IMG/VR virus record: IMGVR_UViG_3300028735_000003
Location: 62,001-126,000 of that record
DNA: 64,000 nt
Reading direction: 5' to 3' (one strand)
Part shown: piece after piece, positions 14,206-37,457 of the stretch
Layout: the number at the start of each line of letters is the position of its first letter
Numbering within the stretch: position 1 is the stretch's first letter
The notes under the pieces: generated by a model
What the model saw: only the letters and a program-made list of their open reading frames with translations
The model's database searches: none
Told to the model about the DNA's origin: nothing
Translations under genes and position numbers: made by a program

Positions 14206-14231
14206 GACAACTCTCCTATTGTTTGTAAAGT

Positions 14232-16791: not shown

Positions 16792-16843
16792 GGCTAACTC
16801 CCTTCCTTTCCCTCTATCCCACTTCCGTGTTTAATGATGGGAA

Positions 16844-17026: not shown

Positions 17027-17196
17027 ATCCGCCTCCAACTGTTTTATGATGGGTAGAACGTTCTACCCTTATTGCAACAGCACATTGACGTTCACACCTT
17101 ACTAGGTGTTTCCTAACGCCCGTCAAGTTGCGTTGCACCACCCACAATGTATTGTTTCATGATGGGATCGTTGCAATACATATAAAAGATATAACT

Positions 17197-17437: not shown

Positions 17438-17505
17438 ACCTGAACAAAGAAACACAAAACTCCCGCTCATCAATTAGATGGCGAGATCAATTAGTAACGG
17501 GTTAG

Positions 17506-17841: not shown

Positions 17842-17922
17842 TTTATGCCTTCTTCGGTGTTGTGTTAGCGGCACCTTGACGCCAACTATGTTTCATGATG
17901 GGACGCGAACACCTGTTTTTCA

Positions 17923-18021
17923 TGGCACACACTTTGCTACTTTGCAAACAATATGCCTACCAAAACACAATGCAAGCAATTGACTTGACAATTGCTTGCA
18001 CTTACTAGCACGCTTCTTGCT
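17923..18021. promoter_or_regulatory. sigma54 cluster 3 (2 sites plus 1 variant) and a 12-bp inverted repeat
   Basis: 17923(+) TGGCACACACTTTGCT, 17943(-) AGGCATATTGTTTGCA, variant 18006(+); TGCAAGCAATTG-N6-CAATTGCTTGCA at 17971-18000. Confidence 0.75.
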
Positions 18022-18830
18022 TATCCTCCGCCCCCGCACGCTTCGTAGCGCGCTTCAAGCTCCGACCAGTTGTCGAAGTCAAGAATTCTTCTAATCTCGC
18101 GAGCCCTTGCATGCTCAAGGGCAGCTTTCATGGCGAAAACTCGCCATTCAGTTTCGGCGACGGTAGCATCATCTACCGTGCCTTCGGCGCGCAATTCACG
18201 CGCCAATTCCCGCTTGACACGCGCATCGATGACGAATTCATCGCGCGCATGTTCCGCGGTTACAAGCGCCGATACAAGTGACCGACGCATCTTGCTGGCG
18301 CGGCTTCCCACGCCAGCCGATCCAAAGACAACTGCCCTACCATGCCGGTTGGCATGGTCATCGGGCACAACATTAGGGTGACGAATCTCGAACATAATGA
18401 TCCGGCAGACGTCAAGCAAGGTACCTGTCGCCATATCTGGCATGAGGTATGCCACGCGATGGTCCTTAGTTTGACGAAGCCAAGCAATAAAGCCGTTACA
18501 ATAAGCGCGCAATTCCGTTGAAGTAGGATTCCGCCGTTGCGGCATCCCCTTTTCGTCACAATAAGCAATCTTTCCGTTGATGGCGGAATGGAATTCATCC
18601 GGTGACAACGGAATTGCGGAAGGGAATTCAGCATTAGCTGAATTCCAACCAGACTTAGACTTACGTGTCCCTTTACAATCAGAACACGACTTAGACTTCA
18701 CGGAACGCGGCTTAGTTGTAGTCGCGTCCGCGGACGAATCTGGAACCATTGCGGAGATAGAATTCTCCGCAATGTAGGTCGAAGCCAATCCTGCGAGAAA
18801 ACTATCAACAATAGACCTAGACATGGCCAA
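18021..18830 (-). CDS. hypothetical protein
   Basis: 269 aa, AAGGGAG RBS, GC-rich codons. Confidence 0.7.
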   Translation of the reverse strand: MAMSRSIVDSFLAGLASTYIAENSISAMVPDSSADATTTKPRSVKSKSCSDCKGTRKSKSGWNSANAEFPSAIPLSPDEFHSAINGKIAYCDEKGMPQRRNPTSTELRAYCNGFIAWLRQTKDHRVAYLMPDMATGTLLDVCRIIMFEIRHPNVVPDDHANRHGRAVVFGSAGVGSRASKMRRSLVSALVTAEHARDEFVIDARVKRELARELRAEGTVDDATVAETEWRVFAMKAALEHARAREIRRILDFDNWSELEARYEACGGGG

Positions 18831-18930
18831 CTCCCTTCTTTCGGGGGTATTCCCTCACTGTTGCGCCACAATTGTTTCATGATGGGTTTACATTATAGGT
18901 AGGTTGAATCCAACAATAATGAAACGAAGA

Positions 18931-19064
18931 CGGTATAGCAGTTGCTATTAGCAAAAACCATACCTGTTCTAAAACTGAATTGGTACTAATCATGCTATAG
19001 CAAAAATAATGCCACCTCTCAAAGAGACTCGGCACAACAATTGCTCCTTACAATATTCATGCCA
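18931..19064. promoter_or_regulatory. sigma54 cluster 4 (5 sites plus 1 variant)
   Basis: 18931(+), 18950(-), 18981(+), 18999(-), 19030(+); GG-N10-GT variant at 19049(-). Confidence 0.8.
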
Positions 19065-19822: not shown

Positions 19823-20446
19823 ATGTACAGAACAAAGATATTGATATTTGTGGTAGGTATATTGTTAAATATAATATGTGGATGTCGGGACGAGAATCCG
19901 AGGTATCATTATATAGAGAGGGAGAAAGTAATTTACGAAGAAGTGATAATGCCAGTCTACTTAGATGTATTATTTAGTGATAAAGAGGAGACAGAGATAG
20001 AGCTTGGGTTAGACAGATGGAACAAGACACTTAATGGGTATATGAGGTTTGAGTATGCTGGTGAAATGGATATGGAGATATGGGCATTGAAGAAGATAGT
20101 AAATGGTGAGGCATATGGAATTTTCAGACTAAGTGAGGGGGATGATATATTAAAGAGGGCAGACGAGAGTAGGGAAGAGGGGGAGAAGGTATTAGGATTT
20201 GTAAATAAAGTAGGTGGCAGTTATATGTATTTAGCCCCTACTAGGATGAATGAAGGGGACATATATTACATAGTAATGCATGAGGCAGGGCATTTACTAG
20301 GGGCACGACATACGAGTGAAGGTATAATGAGGGGGAGTTATATAAGGGGGTACAATGGATTATGTATAGACAAGAGTGCGATAGAGCAAATAATAATTGG
20401 TAGGAATTGGGAATTAGATAGGATTAACTATTGTGTTAAAGATTAA
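19823..20446 (+). CDS. metzincin (matrixin/M10-like) zinc metallopeptidase, putative lipoprotein
   Basis: HEAGHLLGARH zinc motif followed by GIM Met-turn; N-terminal hydrophobic signal ending ICGC. Confidence 0.8.
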   Translation: MYRTKILIFVVGILLNIICGCRDENPRYHYIEREKVIYEEVIMPVYLDVLFSDKEETEIELGLDRWNKTLNGYMRFEYAGEMDMEIWALKKIVNGEAYGIFRLSEGDDILKRADESREEGEKVLGFVNKVGGSYMYLAPTRMNEGDIYYIVMHEAGHLLGARHTSEGIMRGSYIRGYNGLCIDKSAIEQIIIGRNWELDRINYCVKD

Positions 20447-21529
20447 TGAGGGGACATTTAATATTGGCAGAGAATTCTACAAAGATAATCTGAGATTTTA
20501 CATTACATTAAATTTATTATAATTATTTACATAAAACTTAGTTATCGTATATAGTGATTTTACGGAATTTACATCTAGTATAGATCTGGATAGGGAAATA
20601 TAATCTGATTATATTAGAATCTTGATACATGTATAGAAACAATTATCTAATGGATTTATGGATACTGAATTATTTTTCGGTAAGTGAATGATTACAGAAT
20701 GTAGTTATTACAGAATTTTAGGTTAAAAAAAATTAAAATTTAGCTCATATAATACGTCACAACATATTTAGTAGAAGTTATCAATTTTAAAGTTATAATT
20801 TTCACTACATAGTTTTATTATTAATGAAGGAGACATTTATTTTAAGTATGACCAGCACTTAAGCTTATTGGTTGACACACGGACTTATTTTACGTTCCAC
20901 TTTTAGCTGGAGCAGAGGTACTGAGGCAGAGGTAAAGTTATTGAGGCTATTCTTGGCAGAAATGACATTAGGTATTCATTATTTTGTGTTGAGACGGCGA
21001 ACATACAGTTATCGCAATTCGTTTGATTATTTATGTTAGGCTCTAAATTTGGATTATAGTATGTGCAAATGATGAATGATGATAGTATTACAATCAATTT
21101 AATATTAATGTTTGTAGTATTCGATTAATTTTGATACTGGGCATTTATTGGCAAAAAACATAAATATATGCAATGATTATATATTATGGAGAGCGACTTG
21201 ATTGCAGATACAGGTATAATATGGTTACAGAATTTGGAAATAATGAAGTGAATATGGGGCAGTTATTATTTTGGTGAGTGCCGCCCGAAACTCCCTTTGG
21301 TTCATATGATATGTTACAACATGTCACGGCACATCATACAGGGCTAAGATTTAATGAAAGGTTATAGTAATTGGGGTTAAAGTTATGTATTTCAAATTAG
21401 AATATATCTAGGTATTATAATTTTTACTATAGTTTTAGAGTAACGGAGTATAAGTTTAGGCAGTATTGTAGTCGAACGGTGTTTGCAATTTTGTGGGCGA
21501 AGGGAGTTATTTTAGAATTTTGATTTATT

Positions 21530-21850
21530 TTAAGTTTCGATATAACCAGATATTGTTTTTTTATTGAAACACGAGGATAGTTTTAAGTTTAGCCATTGCA
21601 TTTTTATATGCAGGTGCAAGATGAAGCGTGTTGGATATTTGATTTATTAAGTTATTTTTCTGCATCTGGGAATTGAGGATTGATAATTCTAGTAAAGTTA
21701 TGTTGATAATTTGAATAGAGGCAGTAAACATACAGTTACAGTTATCGGAATTAATGCGGATAATTTTCTTTATGTATATATTTTATACAATTTTTTGTAA
21801 TTGTATTTTACAAACTGGGCAGATCATAACATAGTTAGGTACAGTTTTAA
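21530..21850 (-). pseudogene. decayed copy of 23659..24027
   Basis: MICPVCK start and YQHNFTRIINPQFPDAEK segment with stops and frameshifts. Confidence 0.65.
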
Positions 21851-21854
21851 TTTT

Positions 21855-22262
21855 TGTTGTATATTATTTGGGTTAATATTTGGGATACCATTTATAGTAA
21901 TCATTTTAATATGAGTTGTATATTATTTTGTTGTATATTATATGTGTTTATATTTATGGCACCATTTATAGTAATGGTATTAGTCGAAGCCGTTGATATT
22001 TCTTTCTTATATTTTGCTGACCATATTTTAGTTTTATTTATGTCATAGTAGAAGCGGACGTAATATTGATATTGCAATATAGTATAGTGGACCACATTTG
22101 GAATATTCTACCATCACCGTAGTACATTACACTACATTTATCACATAATATTATTAAATCCAATTGATTATATGTTGATGTTGGGCGTAGATCCGAATTA
22201 TAATATGGGCAGATAATGATTGATGATTTATCTATATTTGAATTACAGTATGGGCAAATCAT
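21855..22262 (-). pseudogene. frameshifted copy of the MICPYCN gene
   Basis: N-half in ORF 22038..22262, C-half (YYVRFYYDINKTKIWSAKY...) in ORF 21901..22095 in another frame. Confidence 0.7.
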
Positions 22263-22968
22263 AATAGCGTTGCAATCAATTTAGTATTAAATTTAATTAA
22301 AGTTATAGCAGCGGACATACAATTAACACAAGTAAATTTGTTTTTGTTTTACATTGGGTTTATATTGGGGATATTATTGATAATAACGGTTTTAGGATAA
22401 GTTATTTGTATTTCTTCTATACATTTTAATGACCATATTTCAGTTTTATTTCTATTATAATAGAAGCAGACGTAGTATTTATATGGCATAATGAGTGTTC
22501 AGGGGATTCGATTAAAATTTAAATATGCTTAGCAACATATTACGGCACATCATACAGTGCCAAGATTTAATGAAAGGTTATTGTAATTATGGTTGAAGTT
22601 ATCGACATTAAGTTATAATATATTTAGGTATTATAATTTTTACTACAAGTATAAGTTTAGACGTGGTTGTAGGCGAACGGCGTTACATTATTGGCAATTG
22701 TTTTTATAGATGCTGGGAATGCGAGTTATATATTGGTTTTATTGAAACACTAGAATAGTTTTAAGTTTGGCTATTGCATTTCATTTATTTTTCTGTTTCA
22801 GGGAATTGAGTACCATAAATCTAGTATTGTAGTTTTTAGTATGAATAGATAATAGAGACAGAAGACATATATTTATCACAATTAATACAGGCAATTTTCT
22901 TTATGTATAGATTTTCTATAATTTTTGTAGTTGTATTTTACAAAGTTGTATTTTACAAAATGGTCAGA

Positions 22969-23280
22969 TTATAACATAGTTAGGTACAGTTTTAATTTTT
23001 GTTGTATATTATGTGGATTTATATTTAGGATACCATTTATAGTAATAGCATTAGTCGAAGCCGTTGATATTTCTTCCCTATATTTTACTGACCATATTTC
23101 AGTTTTATTTATGTCATAATGGAAGCAAACCAAGTGTTTAAATGGTATAATAGTGGTCCAGATTTGAAATATTCTACCGTTATGATTGTAAAACACATTA
23201 CATTTATCGCATAATATCATTAAATACAATTGATGATTTATGTTAGATTCTAAGATTGAATTACAGTATGGGCAAATCAT
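22969..23280 (-). CDS. CPxC zinc-finger family protein (type X)
   Basis: MICPYCN...LCDKC...QQKLKLYLTML. Confidence 0.7.
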   Translation of the reverse strand: MICPYCNSILESNINHQLYLMILCDKCNVFYNHNGRIFQIWTTIIPFKHLVCFHYDINKTEIWSVKYREEISTASTNAITINGILNINPHNIQQKLKLYLTML

Positions 23281-23658
23281 GATAGTATTACAATCAATTT
23301 AATATTAGTGTTTGTATGGTTCGATTAATTTTTAATACGTGGTTTTGATTAGCAAGTGATAATTAAATCAAATTTAAATATTTGCAATTTATAATAAAGT
23401 AAAAAGGGGCGGTTGTTATTTTGGTGAGTGCCGCCCGAAGCTCCCTTTGGTTTATATGATATGTCACAACATGTGACGGCACATCATACAGGCCAAGATT
23501 TAATGAAAGGTTATAGTAATTGGGGTTAAAGTTATGGATTTCAAATTAGAATATATCCAGGTATTATAATTTTTACTACAGTTTTCGGAGTATAAGTTTA
23601 GGCAGTATTGTAGTCGAACGGTGTTTGCAATTTTGTGGGCGAAGCGAGTTATTGGTTT

Positions 23659-24027
23659 TTATTGAAACACGAGGATAGTTTTAAGTTTAGAGATTGCATT
23701 TTTAGGGAAGATATTGATAATATGATTGATATTAAATATGCAGGTCCAAGATGAAGCGTGTTGGACATTTGATTTATTAAGTTGTTTTTCTGCTTCAGGG
23801 AATTGAGGACCCATAATTCTAGTAAAGTTATGTTGATAATCGACTATAAACCAATACGTCAACGAATCATATTGAACAAATATTGTAGTTTTTAGTAGTT
23901 CATTATTTTGAGTAGAGACAGTAAACATACAATTACAGTTATCACAATTAATGCGGATAAATTTTTCTTTATGTATAGATTTTTCTATAATTTTTTGTAG
24001 TTGTATTTTACAAAATGGGCAGATCAT
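23659..24027 (-). CDS. CPxC zinc-finger family protein (type Y)
   Basis: MICPFCK...CDNC...ISKLKTILVFQ. Confidence 0.7.
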   Translation of the reverse strand: MICPFCKIQLQKIIEKSIHKEKFIRINCDNCNCMFTVSTQNNELLKTTIFVQYDSLTYWFIVDYQHNFTRIMGPQFPEAEKQLNKSNVQHASSWTCIFNINHIINIFPKNAISKLKTILVFQ

Positions 24028-24335
24028 AAGATAGTTAGGTACAGTTTTAATTTTTGTTGTATATTATGTGGATTTATATTTAGGATACCATTTATAGTAA
24101 TGGTATTAGTATAAGTTTTGGGGAGTTCTTTTGTACATTTTACTGACCATATATTTGTGTGATTTGTATTATAGTAGAAGCGAACAAAGTGTTTATATTG
24201 TACGATATTAGTCCAAATCTGAAATATTCTACCATCATGGAGGTATATTACATTACATTTATCGCATAGTATCATTAAATATAATTGATTATTTATATTA
24301 TATTTTAAAATTGAATTACAGTATTGGCAAATCAT
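24024..24335 (-). CDS. CPxC zinc-finger family protein (type X)
   Basis: MICQYCN...LCDKC...QQKLKLYLTIL; 4-nt overlap with 23659..24027. Confidence 0.7.
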   Translation of the reverse strand: MICQYCNSILKYNINNQLYLMILCDKCNVIYLHDGRIFQIWTNIVQYKHFVRFYYNTNHTNIWSVKCTKELPKTYTNTITINGILNINPHNIQQKLKLYLTIL

Positions 24336-24653
24336 GATAGCATTACAATCAATTTAAGAGTTCATGGGATTAGATTAAAAATTAAATATATGACATTGAG
24401 TCGCCCGGAGCTCCATTTGGTTTACATGATGCTTAGCAACATATCACGGCACATCATACAGGAGCAATATTTAATGAAAGGTTATGGTAATTGTGGGTGA
24501 AGTTATCGACATCAAGTTATAATATATTTAGGTATTATAATTTTCACTATAAGTATAAGTTTAGACGGTATTGTAGGCGAACGGCGTTACATTATTGGCA
24601 ATTCTTTTTATAGATGCGGGAAAGGCGGGTTATATATTGGTTTTATTGAAACA

Positions 24654-25205
24654 CTAGAATAGTTTTAAGTTTAGCCATTGCATTTTAGGGGAGATATTGA
24701 TAATTTCATTAAGATGAAATAATTCTATTGTTGATATTTCTTCTCTATATTTTAATGACCATATTTCAGTTTTATTTATGTCATAATAGAGGCAAACGAA
24801 GTGTTTATACGGTGTAATGGTGGTCCAGATCTTAAATATTCTACCATCATTATGGTACAACACATTACATTTATCGCATAATATTATGAAAGATACAGTT
24901 TTAATTTTGTTGTATATTATGTGTATTTATATTTAGGACAACATTTTTAGTAATAATTGCTGAAGATTCTTATATACATTTTACTGACCATATTTCAGTT
25001 TTATTTATGTCATAATAGAGGCAAACGAAGTGTTTATACGGCATAATGGTTGTCCAGATGCGAAATATTGTACCATCATTAATGTACTGTACAATACAAT
25101 ACAATACAATACAATACATTACAATACATTACATTTACTGCATAGTATAATTAAATATAATTGATTAGTAATGTTATGTTCTAAATTCGAATTACAGTAG
25201 GGACA
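24654..25205 (-). pseudogene. disrupted and chimeric type X/Y copies with a (TACAA)n microsatellite
   Basis: MICPYCNSNLEH start at 25205 broken by repeats at 25085-25137; second fragment ends in a type-Y-like tail. Confidence 0.6.
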
Positions 25206-25207
25206 AA

Positions 25208-25573
25208 TCATGATAGAAGCACGATCAATTTAATTTTATTAAACAATTTATTATAGTTCATAGGCAATATAGGCTGAGTTTTACAGACATGTTTAAATAA
25301 GACGTGACCTATTTTATATTCGGTAGTAGCATTTGGGTGATCTGGTGGTATATGTATAGCTATTTGTGTATAGTTATTATATGTATCGATTTTATATGGC
25401 ATAACAATCATTTCATGATATTTATATTTACGATCTACTACATAATGGAATTTTTGTTTACCGCCTTGGAACTTAATAGGGGTTGGGCACCAATAGACTC
25501 CACGATTTACATCTTGAGTTTTCATAATTTTACCGCACAACGGGCATAATTCTGTTATTTGTTTTCTTATCAT
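25208..25573 (-). CDS. CPxC family protein with conserved C-terminal tail
   Basis: CPLCG...FNKIKLIVLLS. Confidence 0.7.
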   Translation of the reverse strand: MIRKQITELCPLCGKIMKTQDVNRGVYWCPTPIKFQGGKQKFHYVVDRKYKYHEMIVMPYKIDTYNNYTQIAIHIPPDHPNATTEYKIGHVLFKHVCKTQPILPMNYNKLFNKIKLIVLLS

Positions 25574-28578: not shown

Positions 28579-28998
28579 TCACAAAAACGTTGCCAATGTT
28601 TTAATTTTGTTCAATGTATTTATAAGATAGGGATAATCAAGCGCAATCAATCTATTATTTAATACTACTTTTTCTGGTATTAAATAATCTTTTTCATATT
28701 TATTTTTAGTAAAATATACGATAGTTGTATTACGCATCACATAGTTTACATATATTTCATATCCTAAAACTGGAAGATCTACTTTTTCAAATAATTTCTC
28801 ATTAGATAATGATGATATTTGTGAGAATAAATGAGTTGGAGGATTTTCAAATTTAATTTGGTTAGTATCATAATGATTACATACAGACTCTATAAATGAA
28901 AATGAATGTTTATTAAGTATTTGGCATTTATCATTAAAAAAATACTTATATCTCATATCTTTGCCACAGACAGGGCATTTATCATAAGATTTAAACAT
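28579..28998 (-). CDS. CPxC family protein with conserved C-terminal tail
   Basis: CPVCG...LNKIKTLATFL. Confidence 0.75.
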   Translation of the reverse strand: MFKSYDKCPVCGKDMRYKYFFNDKCQILNKHSFSFIESVCNHYDTNQIKFENPPTHLFSQISSLSNEKLFEKVDLPVLGYEIYVNYVMRNTTIVYFTKNKYEKDYLIPEKVVLNNRLIALDYPYLINTLNKIKTLATFL

Positions 28999-29080
28999 TA
29001 AATAAACTCAATTTATAAATGATTTTGTACTTTTATTTTGATAAAATGATACACAATGTGTGATAATAAATGATATTTAA

Positions 29081-29464
29081 TCATAAAAACGTAGCATATA
29101 TCTTAATTTTCCTGATTAATTTATCAAAATTTGATATATCTGGATCAAACCAAGGCACAGTATTATAAAATAATTTACTATATGGAATTCCAGTAGTAAT
29201 TACACCAGCATTTTTTCCTTTTATGATAATAGGCTTATTAAGATATATGGTTTTAGTATTAAAATCCCAACGTATTTCTTTAGTGCTAGAGTCATTATAT
29301 GACATAATGAGCACTTTATCTATATTAGAATCATATTGAATAGTAAATCTGTGACTAGGGTATTTATTACAAATTTTTACGTCGTACAAACTTTTATTGT
29401 TAAAAAGACCGAAATCATTTAAAAGTATATCTCCGCATTTAGGGCATTTTGATGGTATTATCAT
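29081..29464 (-). CDS. CPxC family protein with conserved C-terminal tail
   Basis: CPKCG...IRKIKIYATFL. Confidence 0.75.
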   Translation of the reverse strand: MIIPSKCPKCGDILLNDFGLFNNKSLYDVKICNKYPSHRFTIQYDSNIDKVLIMSYNDSSTKEIRWDFNTKTIYLNKPIIIKGKNAGVITTGIPYSKLFYNTVPWFDPDISNFDKLIRKIKIYATFL

Positions 29465-29526
29465 AATATTTATTAGTAACTTGATATAATATATATTGAT
29501 TTTATAGCTACTTTAATTACATTTAA

Positions 29527-29892
29527 TCATAAGAATGTTATAAACAAAGACACTTTAGATTTTAGATTTTTTAAATCTGGGAAATCGGGATCTATTATTT
29601 TAGATACGTCTATTTTTGACATCTGTTTGTTATTTTTGTAACAAACAATTTGACTTTTCGTATTATAATAATCTAAAAATATAAATATATCATATTTACT
29701 GGTGAGAGACATTTTCAACAAATCAACTTGTTTAGTTTTTTCATCTACGAAAATTTGAAGGCAGTGATTTAAGCCCGCACAAGTTCTTTCTATATAATCT
29801 GATGTCTTATCAACAAATGTTATTAATCTGTTTTTTAATTTATTTGATCGCATTAAATCGCCACAAATAGGGCAATACTTAGTGTCTTGCAT
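29527..29892 (-). CDS. CPxC family protein with conserved C-terminal tail
   Basis: CPICG...KSKVSLFITFL. Confidence 0.75.
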   Translation of the reverse strand: MQDTKYCPICGDLMRSNKLKNRLITFVDKTSDYIERTCAGLNHCLQIFVDEKTKQVDLLKMSLTSKYDIFIFLDYYNTKSQIVCYKNNKQMSKIDVSKIIDPDFPDLKNLKSKVSLFITFL

Positions 29893-29920
29893 ACATAGCT
29901 ATATAACTCGAAGTTTACTC

Positions 29921-29990
29921 GTCAATTACCACAAGCACAAGGCTAGTAGCTTACCCATGGATAAACCTAGATATTCGGCTGATTGACACG
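29921..29990 (-). mobile_element. IS200/IS605 right-end (omegaRNA-like) remnant
   Basis: Minus strand GTCAATCAGCCG...degenerate hairpin...TAATTGAC, matching the 3' end of the 48.3-48.7 kb element. Confidence 0.55.
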
Positions 29991-30103
29991 CAATAAAGGA
30001 AAAGTTAAAAAAACTTTTATGTAAAGCTTGCATCATATCTGAATATCAGATAAATCTATATTTTATTGGCATAAAGTTGTATAGATAAATAAAGGAACTT
30101 TTT

Positions 30104-30454
30104 ATGAGCCACGACTCAACTAATTTATTAGATTTAGTAACTGCATTTGAAAAACGTGCTGAGTTAGCCTTGTTTAAAATTTCTGAAAACAAGAGAGATC
30201 CTAAAGCAAAGGTTAGAAATCGTGGAATAGTTTGTGTTCCTGCTGAAAGAGCAAAAGATAACAAAGATCATTTCCCAATTAATAATATTGATCAAGCAAG
30301 GAACGCCATTGCTAGAGTTAATCAATATAGCAAGGTACCAGATTGGTACAAAGGATCACTTCAGTCATTGGTTAATCTTGTAATACGCAAGGTACATTCG
30401 AAGTATCCATCAATTGAGATTTCTAAAGATGCCAAAAAACCTGGCAAAAATTAA
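30104..30454 (+). CDS. conserved phage hypothetical protein
   Basis: HFPINNIDQARNAIARVNQ motif; AAGGA upstream. Confidence 0.7.
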   Translation: MSHDSTNLLDLVTAFEKRAELALFKISENKRDPKAKVRNRGIVCVPAERAKDNKDHFPINNIDQARNAIARVNQYSKVPDWYKGSLQSLVNLVIRKVHSKYPSIEISKDAKKPGKN

Positions 30455-30460
30455 TTGTTG

Positions 30461-30544
30461 TGCTAAGGAGAGGGCTTGATCACTACACCATTACAGGTAT
30501 TAGTTTCTTAGGCTAGCGCGGCTGCCAGTTTCGCCACGATATCA
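30461..30544 (-). pseudogene. tRNA-Leu remnant (apparent anticodon AAG)
   Basis: Leu-type D arm GCGAAACTGGCAGCCGC, loop CTAAGAA, long variable region; degenerate T arm and unpaired acceptor. Confidence 0.55.
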
Positions 30545-30560
30545 TATTAAATTGTCATAG

Positions 30561-30644
30561 TGCTTAAGAGTGGATTCGAACCACTACGTCCTTTCGAGCA
30601 TAAGTTTTTAAGACTTCCCTGGCTACCAATTACAGCATTACTCC
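30561..30644 (-). pseudogene. tRNA-Leu(TAA) with non-pairing 5' acceptor strand
   Basis: D arm CTG...CAG, loop CTTAAAA, variable arm, T arm AGTGG-TTCGAAT-CCACT; 5' GGAGTAA does not pair with 3' CTTAAGC. Confidence 0.75.
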
Positions 30645-30893
30645 TGGTTAAATCTAGAGTCTGATATACTGGCGCGTGTGCAACCATTACGTCTACATAA
30701 TTTGTATTTATCTCTTTAACCATCCTATCAACTTTAGCCTCCATTTCTGGAAGCTCTCTTTCATAATTCCACATTATATTTATTATCCAAATCCAAAGAA
30801 TCTGCAAGTGGATGGTATAGTAGTGCGTCTGCTGTAGATCCATCAGAAAGATTCACAGTAATTGGTGAACGCCCATATCCACGTGGCTCAATA

Positions 30894-31145
30894 TCATTCA
30901 ACCACATGCGTATCATTTGATTGAGCAATTCCAAATTCATAAACTTTAACCACGGACGGGCTATCTGTCTGTTGAAAATATGACAATATCTTACTAAATC
31001 TCTTAAAGAAAGTTGGATCTGGTTCGTGAGTTACTTTTAAGATTTTATTTGGTTTATCTTCTAGTTCACATAACCATCCGCTTCTGCCTCTTATTGGCTT
31101 ACCAAGTTTAAACAAACTCCACATAGCGGTTCGTGCCGTGCTCAT
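30894..31145 (-). pseudogene. truncated kinase-like fragment
   Basis: GRSGW...KILKVT...SPSVVKVYEFG then stop. Confidence 0.45.
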
Positions 31146-31513
31146 ACCAACAATGTATGTCGTAAAAACTGTCGCGCAAGGACGGACATTTTTTAAAAAT
31201 CATGGATCTTGGTCTTCGATAATCATTCGCACACCTTGATAGATTCCTCGATTACAAAAAGTAAACTCTCCTTGCAATTTATGACAATCAATAAGTCGTT
31301 TCCCCTTCATCACATCCTCGAAATCAGACAGAAACATAGAATATTTGCGCCAGTGTTTAGTGACCTAAACAAAAATGAGCAGACCACTTTGTAGGATAAC
31401 ATCTAACAAACTAAAATGTATCAAAAAAAAAACATACAAATCATTCACTAGTACAAGACTGATGATTTTCTTGGTATAAAATCATTTTCCAAACCATTTA
31501 TTGTGAAGTTTTC

Positions 31514-32071
31514 CTATGAGAAAATAACATAAGTACTTAGCTTATTAATTAACCTTTCTCTGGTTTTAAATTTATAAAGAGGCAAAAGTGGAAGATCTAA
31601 CTTGATTATGTTATCAGCTTTACTGTTCCATACATTTACTTCTGTTTTATTTTCATCATACTCTGTCATAAGACTATAAATTCTATCACTATCATATACA
31701 GATAATATTTCGCGTTTAATAGTTAAGGCTTTTACATATCCATTTGAATTAAATTCCATGTTATTTGTTAGTATGTAGTTTCTACATTCGCTACAATTGC
31801 TGGTAAACACAAGATTTTTAGTCTCAAGATACGTTGAAAATTTTTTTTGATCTGACACTATGAATTTATTAGTTTCTATATAAATCCTTAATGCCAAAGT
31901 AAAAGAATACGTTATCTTTAAAGTAGCATCTAACACTCCATGATTTATAACTTGCTGAATATTTCTTATTTCATTATTTTCTAAGCAACAAATCTTAGCG
32001 GTTGTCTTTTCACCGCAGGAAAAACACGGTCCATTATATAGCATAAAGTCTTTGACTGTAAATCTTTTCAT
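31514..32071 (-). CDS. CxxC family protein with conserved C-terminal tail
   Basis: CFSCG, CSEC...INKLSTYVIFS. Confidence 0.75.
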   Translation of the reverse strand: MKRFTVKDFMLYNGPCFSCGEKTTAKICCLENNEIRNIQQVINHGVLDATLKITYSFTLALRIYIETNKFIVSDQKKFSTYLETKNLVFTSNCSECRNYILTNNMEFNSNGYVKALTIKREILSVYDSDRIYSLMTEYDENKTEVNVWNSKADNIIKLDLPLLPLYKFKTRERLINKLSTYVIFS

Positions 32072-32133
32072 TAACTTATAATTATCATTATATTATCGCG
32101 AGATGTTTTCTATAGCTAAAGCAAATTTAGATC

Positions 32134-33225
32134 TTATGATTTCGCGAAATATCTTAAATACGCCAAAATAAACTCTTGTATATCACCATCTAAAACACGA
32201 TTACAGTTGTTATGTTCAAAATCAGTTCTATGATCTTTTACTAATGAATAAGGTGAAAGAGTATAAGTTCTAATCTGGCTACCAAATTTGGCATCCATTT
32301 GAGACTCGATGAACTTATCTTTTTCAGATTGTCTTTTCTTCTTTTCGATATCATATAATTTTGATTTTAACATCTTCAGCGCAGTTTTCTTATTAGAAAG
32401 TTGATCGCGCTCGGTTCTAACCAATATATTAATGCCTGTAGGTAAATGTTTTAATCTAATTGCGCTAGCAACCTTGTTTACATTTTGACCGCCAGAGCCG
32501 GAAGATGTTTGTGCGGTGATTTCAATATCTTTATCTTCTATTTTAATATCGATAGTATCTTCGATATCTGGTGTAACAGATACTGCTGCAAAGGAAGTAT
32601 GACGGGCATCTCCTGCATTAAAAGGAGAATTACGGATTAAACGATGAACTCCATTTTCTCCTTTAAGGAAGCCATAAGCATATGGACCATCTATTCTATA
32701 AGATACGGAATCTGTACAAATAGAACTATGTTCTTCTGACGGTTTATTATCTAATATTTCCACTTTAAAATTATAAGCATCTGCCCAACGCAAGTACATT
32801 CTGGACATCATTGTAACCCAATTAGCGGCTTCTAGACCGCCAGCGCCCGCATTAATTGTCAGTATAGCCGGGCTATTAGCCATTGGATCTGTCATCATTT
32901 GACGAAACTCTAAGGCTAACAATTCATCATAAATCTTTGCAATATGCTCTTGTTGTTCCGGCAATTCTTCTGGGAGTTCTTTTGCAATTTCTGAATAGAA
33001 ATCGATGTCATCAGACATTTACTGTATTTTTGTGACGAAATCAGTTAGGCGCTGGCGTTCTTTCATAAGGGCGCCAGCTTTCTTTGCATCACTCCAAATA
33101 TTATTATTTGATATCTGTAAATCAATTTCGTCGATTCTAGCTCTATATTTACTAAAATCGGTCATACTATTTATAGACTTTATCTTCTCAACACAGTATG
33201 CAATTAATTGTTGTGCTGTTTCCAT
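32134..33225 (-). CDS. prfB: peptide chain release factor 2, interrupted by an in-frame TAA at codon 69 (33019-33021)
   Basis: SPF anticodon mimic (LIRNSPF), GGQ (SGSGGQNVNK); N-terminal 68 aa (IWSDAKKAGALMKER) in the same frame; junction CAG TAA ATG. Confidence 0.9.
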
Positions 33226-33406
33226 TGGTTTATAACTTTGGTTATAGGTTATAATTAAAACTTATTAATATAGGTGCAGATCTATAGCATTATAAAGACA
33301 TTTCCAAAACCAATGATGGAAGATATTATTATGATTATTGTTACCAAACACATAAATACTATCTAATGACATTGGCACTTATATAATAAGCTTTACAGTT
33401 TAAAAA

Positions 33407-34093
33407 TTAAGACATCAAGACCCAGTTATCTAGACGTGAAAACAATTTATCTCTATATTGAATATCAAAATTTGGTCTTATATTCAGTTTAGGTAATACT
33501 TTCTCAAAAATTTTAGGTCTAAATTTTTTATCTTTTGCTTCTTTATCAGTACGTGTGTAGTAAAGTAATACGGTCTCTTCATTTTCGTAGTCTATATTAA
33601 CCATATAAATCTTTTCTACGTCATTAACTTTTCTTGATAAAGAAAACGCCTCATTAGTGTTTACTATTTTTGAATTCGTTCTACTTAAATGGTTTGTAAT
33701 TATTACATTTTTATCATCCATGTATAGATCAAATATGGGAGAACATCTATAATAACAGCCGCGATATAGATCTATATACCAATTTTTACCAATAAACCCC
33801 TTATCGTTGCAAAGATAGAATAAATATATTTGTTTCTGTAAGGCTTTTTGTTTTAAAGATTGAGAGCTGAATCTTATATCTATTTTGCTATCACCGAATT
33901 CGATATCGATATATGACCCTGCGAAATCAGGGTCTTCTGATTTAAACGGTTCAAAACTATAAACTTTATTTTTTGCGTTAAAAATAGTAATACCTTTAAA
34001 ACACATAGAATCTATCATTTGTAGATATAGAGTCAAATGTTCGCCACAAATCGGACATTTTGAATTAAAATCCAAGAAATTATTAAAATTCAT
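33407..34093 (-). CDS. CPxC family protein with conserved C-terminal tail
   Basis: CPICG...FSRLDNWVLMS. Confidence 0.75.
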   Translation of the reverse strand: MNFNNFLDFNSKCPICGEHLTLYLQMIDSMCFKGITIFNAKNKVYSFEPFKSEDPDFAGSYIDIEFGDSKIDIRFSSQSLKQKALQKQIYLFYLCNDKGFIGKNWYIDLYRGCYYRCSPIFDLYMDDKNVIITNHLSRTNSKIVNTNEAFSLSRKVNDVEKIYMVNIDYENEETVLLYYTRTDKEAKDKKFRPKIFEKVLPKLNIRPNFDIQYRDKLFSRLDNWVLMS

Positions 34094-34154
34094 TTATTTT
34101 ATTATTGCAACTGGCATGGTCTATAATATGTAGATTTTTACTAATTTACCACTA

Positions 34155-34218
34155 GTCAATTATCATCAGCACAAGATTGGTGGCTTATCCTTGGATATCA
34201 ATGATATTTGATTGACTG
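34155..34218 (-). mobile_element. IS200/IS605 right-end remnant
   Basis: Minus strand GTCAATCAAATATC...AAGCCACCAATCTTGTGCTGATGATAATTGAC. Confidence 0.5.
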
Positions 34219-34321
34219 TTTGTTCTACATTATTCTTCTTAGTAGTTTATCATAAAAATAAAGAACTGATGAGAAACTTTCTGTAACTTGTTCTTTCTTT
34301 TCTAAATTTATATAATTATTA

Positions 34322-34960
34322 TTAGCTGAAAATAACTAGAGTAGATACTCTTGTTTTTAACTTATCTTTATCAAAATCTGAGAAATTTATAAATGGTATT
34401 ACCAATGGTTCACTTTCATAATTATTGATTGGGACTATTCTTGTTACATTATAAATCCAATCACTTTGTACCAAATATCTATCAATAGTAACTGATTCAA
34501 AATACGCACGGAATGGATATATTCTGGTATTGATGCTAAAATTTTTATATTCTCCAGATTGTTTTAGTGACTTTTCGCACGTTAAGAAATCTGAATTTAT
34601 AGAATAAAATGTTTTACAGTTTTTATTAGTACATCTAGATGAAATATGTGGTTTGAACTGCTCAAATATTCTTAATGTTTCGTTATATTCGGCATTATTG
34701 GTTTTATTTGGATGAAATGATATTTCATTAGTTTGTATATCTATAGAGCCCACAGAATCAACAGAAGTAGATATGGATGTGTACTTTATATTAAAGACCA
34801 AATGATTATCTGTCAGCTTAGAATTTATTAAAGATGAAATGCCTGAATAATCTAATATAACATAATTTGTAAGTCTAGATTTTAGCGGCTCTCCACAAAA
34901 AATGCATTGTGTCCTGAATGATATAAAATCAGATATATTTTCGAACTTTTTCTGAATCAC
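34322..34960 (-). CDS. CxxC family protein with conserved C-terminal tail
   Basis: CIFCG...KTRVSTLVIFS. Confidence 0.75.
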   Translation of the reverse strand: MIQKKFENISDFISFRTQCIFCGEPLKSRLTNYVILDYSGISSLINSKLTDNHLVFNIKYTSISTSVDSVGSIDIQTNEISFHPNKTNNAEYNETLRIFEQFKPHISSRCTNKNCKTFYSINSDFLTCEKSLKQSGEYKNFSINTRIYPFRAYFESVTIDRYLVQSDWIYNVTRIVPINNYESEPLVIPFINFSDFDKDKLKTRVSTLVIFS

Positions 34961-35601
34961 GAAAATACCAAAAGTTTCTTAATTCTATTTAACATATCAT
35001 ATGGATCTGAAACGTCATTAGATATCAATGGTAAACTTATCGTTTTAAATCCAGTATTTTTTTTAGTATTGTTTATTGGTGTATACTCTGTTTTGTCTAT
35101 TGTATATACATTACGTATTTCATATACATTATTTTTATCATGTTCCAACGTAATTAATTCAGAATTCAAAATTGCTTCATCTATGCGTCTTTCATTTATA
35201 TTAATCTTTAGCATTAGCGTATAAGAATACCTGTAACAATACATACAATCAATTGAGTGATCACACAACATTATCCCATTATACAAAGTATATTGTGGTT
35301 GAGTAACTCCAGGAATGAAAGCAAAAGGTATTTGCTTAAATCCGTATACAAAAGTATTGTTCATAGGTCGAGTAATAGAAAACTCTATAATAGTATTAGA
35401 GTCTATATTAAATACTAATCTGTCGCCATTATACAGATCTACTTTAATATTTCTTATTTTGCTATCAGAAAGAGGTAAAGAATGTGAATGATCATTTTGT
35501 ATATTCCAACAAAACAGAGATTCTGACATAGAATGTCCACATATCGGACAAACTTCACGATATGGATATGCATCACTTAATTTAGTAAAGATTTTCAGCA
35601 C
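34957..35601 (-). CDS. CPxC family protein with conserved C-terminal tail
   Basis: CPICG...LNRIKKLLVFS. Confidence 0.75.
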   Translation of the reverse strand: MLKIFTKLSDAYPYREVCPICGHSMSESLFCWNIQNDHSHSLPLSDSKIRNIKVDLYNGDRLVFNIDSNTIIEFSITRPMNNTFVYGFKQIPFAFIPGVTQPQYTLYNGIMLCDHSIDCMYCYRYSYTLMLKININERRIDEAILNSELITLEHDKNNVYEIRNVYTIDKTEYTPINNTKKNTGFKTISLPLISNDVSDPYDMLNRIKKLLVFS

Positions 35602-35604
35602 AAA

Positions 35605-36258
35605 TTATGACTCGTAATATTCTTCAAATACTTCTTTTGTTAATCCGGAATCAATCAAAATTGGTCTGCCATCTTTAGTTCCCCATGAAGAAATCCTAGC
35701 CATATCTCCTGGCATAAGATTAAATTTTTTACCAATTTCAACTAACTCTTTGTATATATCGCTATTAGATATAGCGTCAAAATTATCTGGTTTCTTTCGA
35801 TATTTATGTTTTGAAACCGATTTTAGCCCAAATTTAACCGACTCACCAAAATCATTGAAATCTAATCCAGTCATTTTCTTGAATTGTTTTTCAGTTATCT
35901 TCTCAAGATATGCGACCTCAATCCAAGCATAATTCTGTGCCTTACGAATTACATTATTTAAATACTTGGATTTCATTTTAGAATTTGCTTCTACTTTATT
36001 TTGCGCAATTCCTTTATCATTCTTAGCTAATTTAAGTACTGTTTTGTTCGGAGTCAAGTACACGATTCTGCTCGATCCAGACGATAAATGTTTTAGATTT
36101 TTCTCGGCATACTTCTTTCGTGCGCTATATGTATCTAATTTTTGAAGATTTTTCAAAATTACATCGGTATTTTCTGAGTTTTCAGGCAATTCTTCCTTCT
36201 CTGCGGTCGCCAATGACTCATATATGCTAGCAAATCTAAGTATTTTATTAGCGTTCAT
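35605..36258 (-). CDS. atypical protein-kinase-like protein
   Basis: SSGSSRIVY loop, VLKLAK, AQNKVE, DMARISSWG, ILIDSG. Confidence 0.65.
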   Translation of the reverse strand: MNANKILRFASIYESLATAEKEELPENSENTDVILKNLQKLDTYSARKKYAEKNLKHLSSGSSRIVYLTPNKTVLKLAKNDKGIAQNKVEANSKMKSKYLNNVIRKAQNYAWIEVAYLEKITEKQFKKMTGLDFNDFGESVKFGLKSVSKHKYRKKPDNFDAISNSDIYKELVEIGKKFNLMPGDMARISSWGTKDGRPILIDSGLTKEVFEEYYES

Positions 36259-36498
36259 GTAATAAATACTTTGTTAGTAATATTTCAGAAGATATATCAT
36301 ATTCTATGATAACAAAAGAAGATTATCTAAAATTGATACAGGAAGTGTTTGCATCAGAAAATGAAGATGATCTAGGTATAGATTCCGAAACATCCACAAA
36401 TGTCGAGCTAATTAACAAAAATAAAATAGATGCAGGATTAACATGATGCTATTTTAAAAGTTATAAGAACAAATAAAAAGATAATTATAGGCGAGTTT

Positions 36499-36798
36499 AT
36501 GGTTATAACGAAATCTATTTCCAGTCATATAAATGAAAATGTATATCAAGACTCTTCTACTAATGATATTAATAACTCAACAATATATACAATTATAGTA
36601 TATGAACATAAAACCAAAACATTAACAGGTATACCTTGTAATATTCAGGTAAAAGTAGATTTATCAAAAGATATAAGATTCGCTAATAAAGATTGGATAA
36701 AATGTTTCAATCGTTTTGCAGGAAAATTAAGTGAAAAAGAGTTCGTAGAGTTATTAAAATGGATGCAAGCAATTACAAAATTATCAGCATTCATCTAA
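36499..36798 (+). CDS. hypothetical protein
   Basis: 99 aa, ends QAITKLSAFI. Confidence 0.6.
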   Translation: MVITKSISSHINENVYQDSSTNDINNSTIYTIIVYEHKTKTLTGIPCNIQVKVDLSKDIRFANKDWIKCFNRFAGKLSEKEFVELLKWMQAITKLSAFI

Positions 36799-37457
36799 TA
36801 GAACGTCAATAATTTGTTTATTCTTGCTATGGTCTCAGATTTAGAGACAAATTTTATTAGACTTGTTTCTATAGTATTAAAGTTAGGAATGTATACAGAA
36901 GTTTTTATGTCATCCTTATATCTTTCTGTTCCGAAATTCAATATACTCTTATTAGTAATATAATTATTTACTAACTTAAATAGTCTATATCCATCATATC
37001 CATCAGTAATATGTGTTGATAAATCAAATGATTCTGAACTTATTGTTAAATCTGGTAATTTTAATGGTTCTGTCAGATTTATTTTGAAATAATTAGATGA
37101 GTACTGATATGATTTGCAATGATTACAGAATTTGTATATTTTATACATGCCGGTGTTTGCATTAAAAGATACAAATCTTTTAAGAAGAGACACCGGAATA
37201 TATTCTATTTTTTTGCTGTTTTTTCTATAAAACTCTATAAAAAATGAATTATCATCTAATCCAAATGAATAGCCTACATAATATGATTTTTGATTTTTAT
37301 CTATGGAAGGAATAAATAGACTAATCAATAATCTTCCATCTTCATATCTATGTTTTTGCTGTTTTCGTGAATTAAACGTCATTGACAGAGTGTTATCACA
37401 CAATGGGCACATATTCCTATAAACTAAAAAATCTCTCAAATTCATTACTATTTCCAA
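36795..37457 (-). CDS. CPxC family protein with conserved C-terminal tail
   Basis: CPLCD, CNHC...IARINKLLTFY. Confidence 0.75.
   Translation of the reverse strand: MEIVMNLRDFLVYRNMCPLCDNTLSMTFNSRKQQKHRYEDGRLLISLFIPSIDKNQKSYYVGYSFGLDDNSFFIEFYRKNSKKIEYIPVSLLKRFVSFNANTGMYKIYKFCNHCKSYQYSSNYFKINLTEPLKLPDLTISSESFDLSTHITDGYDGYRLFKLVNNYITNKSILNFGTERYKDDIKTSVYIPNFNTIETSLIKFVSKSETIARINKLLTFY

What the first reader, a model, noticed from the sequence alone, without database searches (positions are those of the whole stretch)
20900..25210. Gene accordion with chimeric and hypervariable CPxC cassettes
Seen: at least five type X and three type Y copies, intact, frameshifted or fused (24654..24863 joins an X-type middle to a Y-type tail). 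The intact X copies share ends but differ in the central segment (TTIIPFKHLVCFHYDINKTE vs TNIVQYKHFVRFYYNTNHTN). Established: poxvirus-style accordions amplify counter-defence genes under host pressure. Inference: recombinational diversification of a host-interaction surface.
Basis: partly seen in the sequence, partly recalled or inferred. Interest (0 to 1): 0.6.

Follow-up and report, generated by a model that had tools for sequence, protein, structure and literature searches.

The report
Decaying tandem gene array, jumbo phage
A 354-kb phage from a microbial mat carries about five and a half tandem copies of a 1-kb two-gene cassette encoding small zinc-ribbon proteins of an uncharacterised family; the copies have swapped segments and most are now broken, so this is an old amplification in decay rather than an active hypervariable system.

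Summary
The repeats are real. On the minus strand, a 1,055-bp unit has been amplified head to tail between 25211 and 20903. The unit holds X (103 aa), then Y (122 aa) overlapping X by 4 bp, then a ~380-bp spacer. I count 7 X-derived segments (2 intact) and 5 Y-derived segments (1 intact). Only unit 24335-23281 is complete.

The genome is a jumbo tailed phage, not a giant eukaryotic virus. X and Y are short members of a phage multigene family with 277 clusters in the library. It has no Pfam or PHROG model and no structural relative. At least 13 paralogs lie at 20.9-37.5 kb, and related phage contigs share the layout.

The units are clear mosaics (chi-square p = 1e-14), so recombination between copies is supported.
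- dN/dS is 0.25-0.39, including in the "hypervariable" centre.
- There is no adenine bias and no reverse transcriptase.
- The two intact X copies differ by dS 0.47, about the ortholog distance to the nearest relative (0.50).
- Unit-specific contigs lie at about the depth of the right flank.

My reading is birth-and-death evolution by unequal recombination, gene conversion and slippage. Protein function is unknown; a host-interaction role is only an inference.

The parts
25208..25573 (-). Z: intact 121-aa paralog (CPLCG...CP, tail NKIKLIVLLS) at the head of the array. It is not part of the repeated unit. Its stop overlaps the start of the first X by 4 nt (ATGA).
   Evidence: Ortholog in L001 is 83% identical with dN/dS 0.19.
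24891..25211 (-). U1: broken X copy. It has a 35-nt slippage insertion, a 12-nt and a 1-nt deletion, and a truncated tail joined directly to the next X fragment.
25090..25133 (.). (TACAA)8.8 microsatellite, which reads (TTGTA)n on the coding strand and interrupts U1 X.
   Evidence: alignment to L001
24643..24919 (-). U1': an X fragment (from about unit position 29, without the zinc knuckle) fused near 24722 to a Y tail. It contains the chimeric ORF 24654-24863, and the Y tail carries a 1-nt deletion.
24336..24642 (-). Spacer of U1', of the type shared with U3 (about 92% identical).
   Evidence: (D6)
24024..24335 (-). U2 X: intact, 103 aa, with all four zinc-ribbon cysteines kept (C3, C6, C24, C27).
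23659..24027 (-). U2 Y: the only intact Y, 122 aa. Its start overlaps the X stop by 4 nt.
   Evidence: Ortholog in L016 is 42% identical with dN/dS 0.18.
23281..23658 (-). U2 spacer. It has a conserved ~200-nt core with a long hairpin, then GGGCGG-N18-CCGCCC followed by a U-run (terminator-like), then the region upstream of the next X.
   Evidence: fold z = -3.05
22969..23280 (-). U3 X: intact, 103 aa.
   Evidence: AF2 model with pLDDT 85
22500..22968 (-). U3 Y remnant plus a truncated spacer. In Y the start codon is lost, the first Cys codon is a stop, there is a 15-nt duplication at 22929-22959, and there are large deletions.
22341..22499 (-). Xf: an X fragment (middle and tail only). It is the copy closest to the X of the related phage contig L001.
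21824..22262 (-). U4 X: it has a 45-nt N-terminal duplication, a 5-nt insertion causing a frameshift, and a ~74-nt tail duplication.
21098..21829 (-). U4 Y remnant (stop at codon 15, plus deletions) and spacer. This spacer is 95-97% identical to the U2 spacer.
20903..21097 (-). U5: the end of the array. An X N-terminus (second Cys lost) is fused to a Y middle piece and then runs into unrelated sequence.
28579..37457 (-). Older part of the same family, all on the minus strand. Short paralogs lie at 28579-28998, 29081-29464 and 29527-29892. Long paralogs lie at 31514-32071, 33407-34093, 34322-34960, 34957-35601 and 36795-37457. They flank a release-factor gene at 32134-33018. No DNA-level repeats remain here.

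Best explanation
The region is the youngest end of a lineage-specific multigene family in a 354-kb tailed jumbo phage from a microbial mat, and it is still recombining.

Shown:
- A 1,055-bp cassette was amplified head to tail to about 5.5 units. It consists of gene X, a 4-bp-overlapping gene Y, and a ~380-bp spacer carrying a hairpin, a terminator-like stem and the region upstream of the next X.
- Units later exchanged segments, giving a mosaic pattern.
- Most units then decayed. The lesions are microsatellite slippage, short internal duplications, frameshifts, a lost start codon, premature stops, and deletions that fuse X to X and X to Y.
- Two X copies and one Y copy remain intact and show purifying selection.
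- X and Y are short members of an uncharacterised phage protein family. The predicted fold is a 4-Cys zinc ribbon, a beta-sheet and a conserved C-terminal helix, and it matches no solved structure.

Inferred:
- The amplification arose by unequal homologous recombination or replication slippage, as in laboratory phage accordions.
- The amplification is old, and what we see is birth-and-death turnover rather than a live copy-number response.
- The proteins are soluble, zinc-dependent binders that act on the host (takeover or counter-defence). This rests only on their position in the low-density accessory arm, the size of the paralog expansion and the fast turnover between relatives.

The confidence given applies to the structural and evolutionary account. 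The functional guess alone deserves about 0.3.
For: - Anatomy and significance.
- Unique locus in the genome.
- Phage identity: Baseplate_J, terminase gpA with inteins and ribonucleotide reductase; tRNAs and a tmRNA.
- Mosaicism: (chi-square p = 1e-14; runs test p < 1e-4).
- Purifying selection and age. dN/dS is 0.25-0.39; paralog dS 0.47 against ortholog dS 0.50.
- Not an assembly artefact: Logan contigs of the one public run that holds the stretch (possibly the source sample) match unit-specific pieces with 0 mismatches in 7 of the 8 listed records. They lie at depth 55-70 against 63.6 for the right flank, and at about double depth where two units are identical.
- Family membership: X vs Y hhalign 96.9%, E 1.5e-10. 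X and Y vs a 119-sequence profile of long members: 91% and 86%, E 1e-6 and 5e-6. The profile search gives 277 clusters. All genome copies lie at 20.9-37.5 kb.
- Same block architecture in related contigs: long paralogs, a release-factor gene, then a run of at least 15 short paralogs with overlapping stops and starts.
- Turnover between relatives: L001 has Z-X-Y, while L016 has Z-Y with no X.
- Fold: AF2 pLDDT 85 and 87. No PDB match: Foldseek E > 0.03, VIA Z <= 5.0.
Against: - Function is not shown. No family, fold or neighbour gives a biochemical lead. A weak Lar-like hit (19 bits against a cutoff of 39.6) and a weak CPxCG_zf hit (16.5 against 27.2) cover only the zinc knuckle.
- Only one sequencing run holds the locus, and only as contigs. 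These cannot show rare copy-number variants, so within-population polymorphism is not excluded.
- The left-flank contig (which runs to 21375, inside the array) has depth 126 against 64 for the right flank. Four loose contig ends lie at 20529, 21629, 21870 and 21912. These could reflect a second structural variant.
- The central segments of all broken X copies are still open frames with dN/dS about 0.37-0.39. Recent inactivation fits this, but it is also what donor cassettes would show.
- The dN/dS estimates rest on few sites (27-103 codons).
Confidence: 0.75

Rival explanations
1. Live adaptive accordion: copy number of X-Y is expanding and contracting now, under pressure from a host defence. 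X or Y would be a counter-defence factor whose dose or variants matter.
For: - Tandem head-to-tail amplification of a gene cassette.
- Recombination between units.
- Different arrangement in relatives.
- Unexplained 2x depth of the left-flank contig and loose contig ends inside the array.
- Laboratory precedent in T4 and T6 (PMC9391042, PMC13096335).
Against: - Copies are 70-90% identical, not near-identical.
- dS between the intact X copies is 0.47, about the distance to the nearest other phage.
- Most copies are dead.
- Unit-specific contigs lie near single-copy depth, and no alternative joints were seen.
- dN/dS is below 1 everywhere.
Confidence: 0.12
2. Silent-cassette diversification: the broken copies serve as a donor library. 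Gene conversion moves their segments into the single complete unit (24335-23281), producing variant X and Y proteins in the phage population, as in bacterial antigenic variation.
For: - Clear mosaicism that includes exchange between the intact unit and dead units.
- The central segment of every broken X is still an open frame with dN/dS about 0.37-0.39.
- The spacers are better conserved than the genes and carry a long hairpin.
Against: - No dedicated recombinase, reverse transcriptase or recombination signal was identified.
- Lesions also hit the parts that would need to be donated.
- Ordinary gene conversion in a recombination-proficient phage explains the mosaics.
- Open frames of 27-60 codons with low dN/dS are expected if inactivation is recent.
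- There is a single sample and no population variation data.
Confidence: 0.06
3. Diversity-generating retroelement: the variable X centre would be mutagenised from a template repeat by a reverse transcriptase.
For: Only the appearance of conserved ends and a variable centre.
Against: - No reverse transcriptase in the 354-kb genome (best PF00078 hit 10.6 bits, E 0.07).
- Mismatches are not at adenines (13 of 53, with A at 40% of bases).
- Most mismatches are transitions (30 of 53) and third codon positions are the commonest class (24 of 53).
Confidence: 0.01
4. Assembly artefact: the array would be a misassembly of strain variants of a single X-Y locus stacked in tandem.
For: - It is a metagenome assembly.
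- The left-flank contig has double depth.
Against: - A separate unitig assembly (Logan; possibly of the same sample's reads) reproduces unit-specific sequence with 0 mismatches in 7 of the 8 listed records. Pieces cross unit boundaries, for example 21838-22639 and 20300-21375.
- The listed pieces leave four gaps (21376-21562, 23001-23090, 23525-23660, 24544-25011), so continuity across the whole array is not shown.
- Units differ by distinct indels, fusions and truncations, not just SNPs.
- Depth is about one copy per unit, and about double exactly where U2 and U3 are identical.
Confidence: 0.03

Closest known systems
Segmental amplifications ('accordions') in T-even phages: tifA in T4 under toxIN (Srikant et al. 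2022, PMC9391042), and SegB-promoted amplification of anti-defence loci in T6 (PMC13096335). The original poxvirus accordions are cited from my own knowledge (Elde et al. 2012).
   Same: Both are head-to-tail tandem amplifications of a short gene-bearing segment in a large dsDNA virus, made by recombination in the accessory part of the genome. A homing-endonuclease-type gene sits close by: an intein with a LAGLIDADG domain lies in the protease gene about 650 bp from the array head.
   Different: The known cases have near-identical copies that arise within days and vary in number within a population, and the amplified gene has a proven counter-defence function. Here the copies are old (dS about 0.5), mosaic and mostly dead. 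No copy-number polymorphism was seen, and the function is unknown. Any role for the endonuclease is pure speculation.
Birth-and-death evolution of tandem multigene families with gene conversion (a general concept; paralog families of jumbo phages, from my own knowledge).
   Same: It has tandem paralogs of very different ages, pseudogenes next to intact genes, purifying selection on the survivors, mosaic copies, and gain and loss between relatives.
   Different: This is a previously undescribed protein family, and the amplified unit is a two-gene cassette with its own structured spacer.
Pseudogene-cassette antigenic variation (pilE/pilS, vlsE; from my own knowledge).
   Same: One complete unit sits beside several truncated, promoter-less or broken homologous cassettes, with evidence of segment exchange.
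   Different: No directional conversion, no recombination signal and no population variation have been shown. The cassettes carry disabling lesions, not just truncations.
Small CPxCG zinc-finger proteins (Pfam PF19769) and Lar restriction-alleviation proteins (TIGR03655).
   Same: They share an N-terminal CxxC...CxxC zinc-ribbon knuckle in a small protein.
   Different: Scores are below the curated cut-offs (16.5 against 27.2 bits; 19.1 against 39.6 bits) and cover only the knuckle. The beta-sheet and the C-terminal helix motif are not shared.

Membership tests
Viral genomic accordion (adaptive segmental amplification) | Head-to-tail tandem repeats of a gene-containing segment | tested here: met
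   A 1,055-nt unit in about 5.5 copies, with periods of 1055-1071 nt.
Viral genomic accordion (adaptive segmental amplification) | Recent, near-identical copies whose number varies within the population | tested here: not met
   Copies are 70-90% identical. dS is 0.47 between the intact X copies against 0.50 for orthologs. Unit-specific contigs lie at about the right-flank depth, with no alternative joints. This rests on contigs of one run only, so rare variants are not excluded.
Viral genomic accordion (adaptive segmental amplification) | The amplified gene is a host-range or counter-defence factor | not testable with these tools
   No informative family, fold or literature match.
Diversity-generating retroelement | Reverse transcriptase gene nearby | tested here: not met
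   The best PF00078 hit in the whole genome is 10.6 bits, E 0.07.
Diversity-generating retroelement | Template/variable repeat pair differing at adenines | tested here: not met
   13 of 53 mismatches fall on A, which is 40% of the bases. Most mismatches are transitions and third codon positions are the commonest class.
Pfam PF19769 CPxCG_zf | Score at or above the gathering threshold (27.2 bits) | tested here: not met
   Y scores 16.5 bits over profile positions 1-53 of 183; X has no hit.
Lar restriction-alleviation family (TIGR03655) | Score at or above the curated cut-off (39.6 bits) | tested here: not met
   Y scores 19.1 bits, E 0.0012, over the zinc knuckle only.
Uncharacterised jumbo-phage family 'CxxC...CxxC...(R/K)(I/L)KxLxxF(S/L)-COOH' (defined here) | Four-Cys split zinc ribbon at the N-terminus | tested here: met
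   C3, C6, C24 and C27 are present in both intact X copies and the L001 X; Y has C3, C6, C28 and C31. They are invariant in the 119-sequence alignment of long members.
Uncharacterised jumbo-phage family 'CxxC...CxxC...(R/K)(I/L)KxLxxF(S/L)-COOH' (defined here) | Conserved C-terminal helix motif ending the protein | tested here: met
   X ends QQKLKLYLT(M/I)L and Y ends SKLKTILVFQ. It is modelled as a helix at pLDDT of about 90.
Uncharacterised jumbo-phage family 'CxxC...CxxC...(R/K)(I/L)KxLxxF(S/L)-COOH' (defined here) | Significant profile match to members from other phages | tested here: met
   hhalign of X and Y against the long-member profile gives 91% and 86%, E 1e-6 and 5e-6. That profile contains no X or Y but includes three long paralogs from this window. 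The library search gives 277 clusters at E <= 1e-3.
Birth-and-death tandem multigene family | Intact genes, pseudogenes and chimeras side by side; purifying selection on survivors; gain and loss between relatives | tested here: met
   lesions; dN/dS 0.2-0.4; Z-X-Y against Z-Y in relatives.

The most novel reading that the evidence does not exclude
The array is a phage-borne cassette system. The broken X and Y copies would be kept as a donor library, and gene conversion would shuffle their segments into the one complete X-Y unit. The phage population would then carry many variants of a host-binding zinc-ribbon protein. This would be an antigenic-variation-like mechanism, which to my knowledge has not been described in a virus of bacteria.
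Probability: 0.06. Interest if true: 0.85.

Novelty: new member of a known kind. Interest (0 to 1): 0.4.

Why it matters
Gene accordions in phages are known mainly from laboratory evolution. A natural genome that preserves an old amplification shows what such events leave behind, and how multigene families in jumbo phages may grow. This one has mosaic units, fusions and slippage scars next to two surviving genes.

The analysis also defines a sizeable, unannotated phage protein family. It has 277 clusters, no Pfam or PHROG model, and a confidently predicted fold with no solved relative. Members form blocks of 13 to more than 20 paralogs around a release-factor gene in several jumbo-phage contigs. 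That makes it a concrete target for functional work on host takeover or counter-defence.

The finding does not show hypervariability or an arms-race signature.

Tried and rejected
- **Giant eukaryotic virus.** I first suspected this from the AT-rich genome and the intein. It is rejected: Baseplate_J and terminase gpA are present, and the mimivirus AAAATTGA promoter motif is not enriched (25 and 28 found against 20 expected).
- **Stop-codon recoding as rescue for the broken copies.** Rejected. The internal stops are a mix of TAA, TAG and TGA together with frameshifts. No code raises coding density convincingly. There is no suppressor tRNA.
- **DGR.** Rejected.
- **Dispersed mobile element or known RNA in the spacer.** The spacer occurs only in the array. 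Rfam gives nothing, with the best hit at E 0.98.
- **Sigma-70 promoter and terminator scan.** Not above the shuffled background.
- **Close relatives of X and Y.** None for either in IMG/VR. The word-based protein search found one for X and none for Y.
- **Cultured or deposited phages.** No hit for a long paralog.
- **Pfam, PHROGs and NCBIfam on 38 family members.** Only sub-threshold noise.
- **PDB sequence profile search.** Nothing.
- **Fold searches** (PDB Foldseek, VIA wide, ESM Atlas). Nothing above noise. BFVD returned only uncharacterised proteins of uncultured Caudovirales phages. The Atlas feature searches gave nothing.
- **Complex prediction for X-Y.** Not run, because I make no binding claim.

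Full report
**What genome this is.** The window is bases 62,001-126,000 of a 353,765-bp IMG/VR virus record, linear, with a CheckV completeness of 79%. It is a jumbo tailed phage. It encodes a Baseplate_J protein, a gpA-type large terminase interrupted by inteins, and a ribonucleotide reductase with an intein. It also carries nine tRNAs and a tmRNA. GC content is 33%. The first ~100 kb have low coding density (0.45-0.75) against 0.85-1.0 in the core, and the finding lies in this accessory arm. The only public run holding the stretch is a microbial-mat metagenome.

All genes of the region read on the minus strand. Self-comparison gives a repeat of period 1055-1071 nt, with E-values down to 1e-174. 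The reference unit is 24335-23281:
- X: 312 nt, 103 aa.
- Y: 369 nt, 122 aa, with its ATG overlapping the X stop as ATGA.
- A 378-nt spacer.

**Layout, reading downstream from the intact paralog Z (25573-25208)**:
- **U1 (25211-24891).** An X copy broken by a (TTGTA)n slippage insertion at 25090-25133, two small deletions and a truncated tail.
- **U1' (24919-24336).** An X fragment without its zinc knuckle, fused near 24722 to a Y tail and followed by a spacer.
- **U2.** Complete.
- **U3 (23280-22500).** X is intact. Y has lost its start codon, has its first Cys codon turned into a stop, a 15-nt duplication and large deletions. The spacer is truncated.
- **Xf (22499-22341).** An X middle and tail only.
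- **U4 (22262-21098).** X has a 45-nt N-terminal duplication, a 5-nt frameshifting insertion and a ~74-nt tail duplication. Y stops at codon 15.
- **U5 (21097-20903).** An X N-terminus fused to a Y middle piece, running into unrelated sequence.

This gives 7 X-derived segments (2 intact) and 5 Y-derived segments (1 intact). The array is unique in the genome.

**It is unlikely to be an assembly artefact.** Logan contigs of run X1, a separate unitig assembly (the run may be the sample the window was assembled from), match unit-specific pieces, with 0 mismatches in 7 of the 8 listed records. They cross unit boundaries and lie at depth 55-70, against 63.6 for the 18.6-kb right-flank contig. Depth rises to 107-138 where U2 and U3 are identical. 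The listed pieces leave four gaps (21376-21562, 23001-23090, 23525-23660, 24544-25011), so no single record spans the array. No alternative joints were reported, but contigs drop rare variants.

Two things remain unexplained. The left-flank contig, which reaches 21375, has depth 126 although that DNA is single-copy in the assembly. Four loose contig ends fall at 20529, 21629, 21870 and 21912.

- **Selection.** The two intact X copies give dN/dS 0.29. In the "hypervariable" centre it is 0.25, and dS is also highest there: 0.93, against 0.26-0.58 at the ends. The centre is therefore older, not faster at the protein level. Across the central 27 codons of all seven X copies (six here, one in a relative), every pair has dN/dS below 1. 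The pooled values are 0.36 for intact pairs, 0.37 for intact-broken pairs and 0.39 for broken pairs.
- **DGR.** There is no reverse transcriptase and no adenine bias.
- **Age.** The paralog dS of 0.47 is about the ortholog dS between this phage and its nearest relative: 0.50 for Z and 0.51 for the neighbouring protease.
- **Recombination.** This is supported. Among U2, U3 and U4, the closest pair changes along the unit. In the X N-part U2=U3 at 21 of 33 informative sites. In the X middle U3=U4 at 20 of 39. In the spacer U2=U4 at 60 of 67. The chi-square p is 1e-14, and there are 69 runs against 113 expected. Spacer types alternate (U1' resembles U3, U2 resembles U4). This pattern suggests a two-unit duplication followed by further exchange.

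**What X and Y are.**
- X and Y are homologous over their full length (hhalign 96.9%, E 1.5e-10).
- Along 20.9-37.5 kb there are at least 13 paralogs on the same strand. They share an N-terminal CxxC...CxxC and a C-terminal (R/K)(I/L)KxLxxF(S/L) ending.
- A profile of them finds 277 clusters (at 50% identity) among 1.84 billion library proteins. Most are ~180-235 aa and span the whole profile. The ten hits looked up were all metagenomic, named "hypothetical protein" or unnamed.
- X and Y match a profile of 119 long members at 91% and 86%. They correspond to the part from the second zinc knuckle to the C-terminus.
- There is no Pfam, PHROG or NCBIfam model and no PDB sequence relative.
- AlphaFold models are confident: X has pLDDT 85 and pTM 0.75, and a long paralog has 87 and 0.81. 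They show a zinc ribbon, a beta-sheet and a C-terminal helix.
- They match nothing in the PDB (Foldseek E > 0.03; VIA Z <= 5.0, below the usual noise of 7-8). The only matches are uncharacterised proteins of uncultured Caudovirales phages in BFVD.

**Comparative context.**
- Related jumbo-phage contigs (L013/L014, 98 kb, and a 22.5-kb Logan contig) have the same block: ~200-aa paralogs, an RF2-like release-factor gene, more ~200-aa paralogs, then a run of at least 15 short (105-136 aa) paralogs with overlapping stops and starts. One of these, L013:19499-19867, ends in NPTNVEQKLKLYLLFM, close to the X tail.
- Those arrays, and the older part of the window's block, show no DNA-level repeats. The X-Y array is the only young amplification.
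- Gene content turns over between relatives. L001/L002 (about 85% nt identity) have protease | Z | X | Y, with an intact X that is closest to the window's fragment Xf. L016 (Z 63% identical) has protease | three paralogs | Z | Y-ortholog, with no X.

**Mechanism.**
- Shown: amplification, mosaic exchange, decay by slippage, duplication and deletion, and purifying selection on the survivors.
- Inferred: the amplification arose by unequal homologous recombination, as in T4 tifA amplifications (PMC9391042). The array is now in the collapse and decay phase of a birth-and-death process.
- The protein function is open. My best guess, at about one chance in three, is soluble zinc-dependent proteins that bind host factors (takeover or counter-defence). 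This is based only on genomic position, paralog expansion and turnover.
- An intein with a LAGLIDADG domain lies about 650 bp from the array head. Homing endonucleases can promote amplification in T6 (PMC13096335). I note this only as a lead.

**Verdict.** This is a real and well-defined feature. It is not supported as a current, positively selected or hypervariable system. The case is a new member of a known kind, and it lies inside a protein family that has not been described.

Noticed in passing
window 25861-27669 (+): A 602-aa papain-like cysteine protease interrupted by an intein with a LAGLIDADG-type domain (PF14528, E 3.5e-4). It is divergently transcribed from the array head. The same interrupted gene is present in the relative L001 (dN/dS 0.21).
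   Followed up: partly
window 32134-33018 (-); L013:11321-12415: An RF2-like peptide-chain release-factor gene (PCRF + RF-1 domains) sits inside the paralog block. The same position is conserved in three independent jumbo-phage contigs. I found no sign of stop-codon recoding and no suppressor tRNA.
   Followed up: partly
window 1-19000: This stretch has higher GC (38-47% against 28-33% elsewhere) and few long ORFs. It contains a TnpB/IS605 OrfB-like gene at 1789-2439 (+) (PF01385 E 2e-17, PF07282 E 5e-15). The array ends abruptly (U5) about 1.9 kb to its right, so it may be a foreign insertion that truncated the array.
   Followed up: partly
window 13298-14547 and 15535-15747: There are further local repeats. 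13350-13770 matches 13791-14207 at 79%, with more copies up to 14547, and an 86-nt unit is repeated 2.4 times at 15535-15747. Rfam calls a tRNA at 14683-14745 (-) (33.8 bits) that ARAGORN does not.
   Followed up: no
window 20300-21375, and 20529, 21629, 21870, 21912: In run X1 the contig covering the left flank and the last part of the array has depth 126, against about 64 for the array and the right flank. The DNA is single-copy in the assembly. Four contigs end with unrelated sequence at the listed places. This may be a second structural variant in the sample.
   Followed up: partly
window 23395-23662 (-) and the three other spacers: The spacer core (~200 nt) is conserved as well as or better than the X gene: 85-97% between units for the first two spacer segments. 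It folds with z = -3.05, with a long near-perfect hairpin (CUGUAUGAUGUG...CAUAUCAUAUA). This is followed by GGGCGG-N18-CCGCCC and a U-run. It has no Rfam match and does not occur elsewhere in the genome.
   Followed up: partly
window 36499-36798 (+); L013:7922-8437 (-), 13631-14014 (+), 14015-14440 (-): Neighbouring proteins, at least three of them without the N-terminal zinc knuckle, end in a similar C-terminal motif (...KLSAFI, ...KLSAFL, ...KMKAFY, ...QLRAFL). The C-terminal helix may be a module shared beyond the zinc-ribbon family.
   Followed up: no
window 35605-36258 (-); L013:8478-9140 (+): A well-conserved 217-220-aa protein with no Pfam hit is embedded among the long paralogs in both phages. 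It is clearly orthologous by eye.
   Followed up: no
window 19823-20446 (+): A 207-aa protein with an HExxH motif and weak, sub-threshold matches to zinc metallopeptidase families. It lies just beyond the left end of the array.
   Followed up: no
genome 306537-306898 (outside the window): A phage-encoded tmRNA with tag ANDNAFVPMAQAA, plus nine tRNAs, including two tRNA-Ile(tat). These may hint at the host.
   Followed up: no
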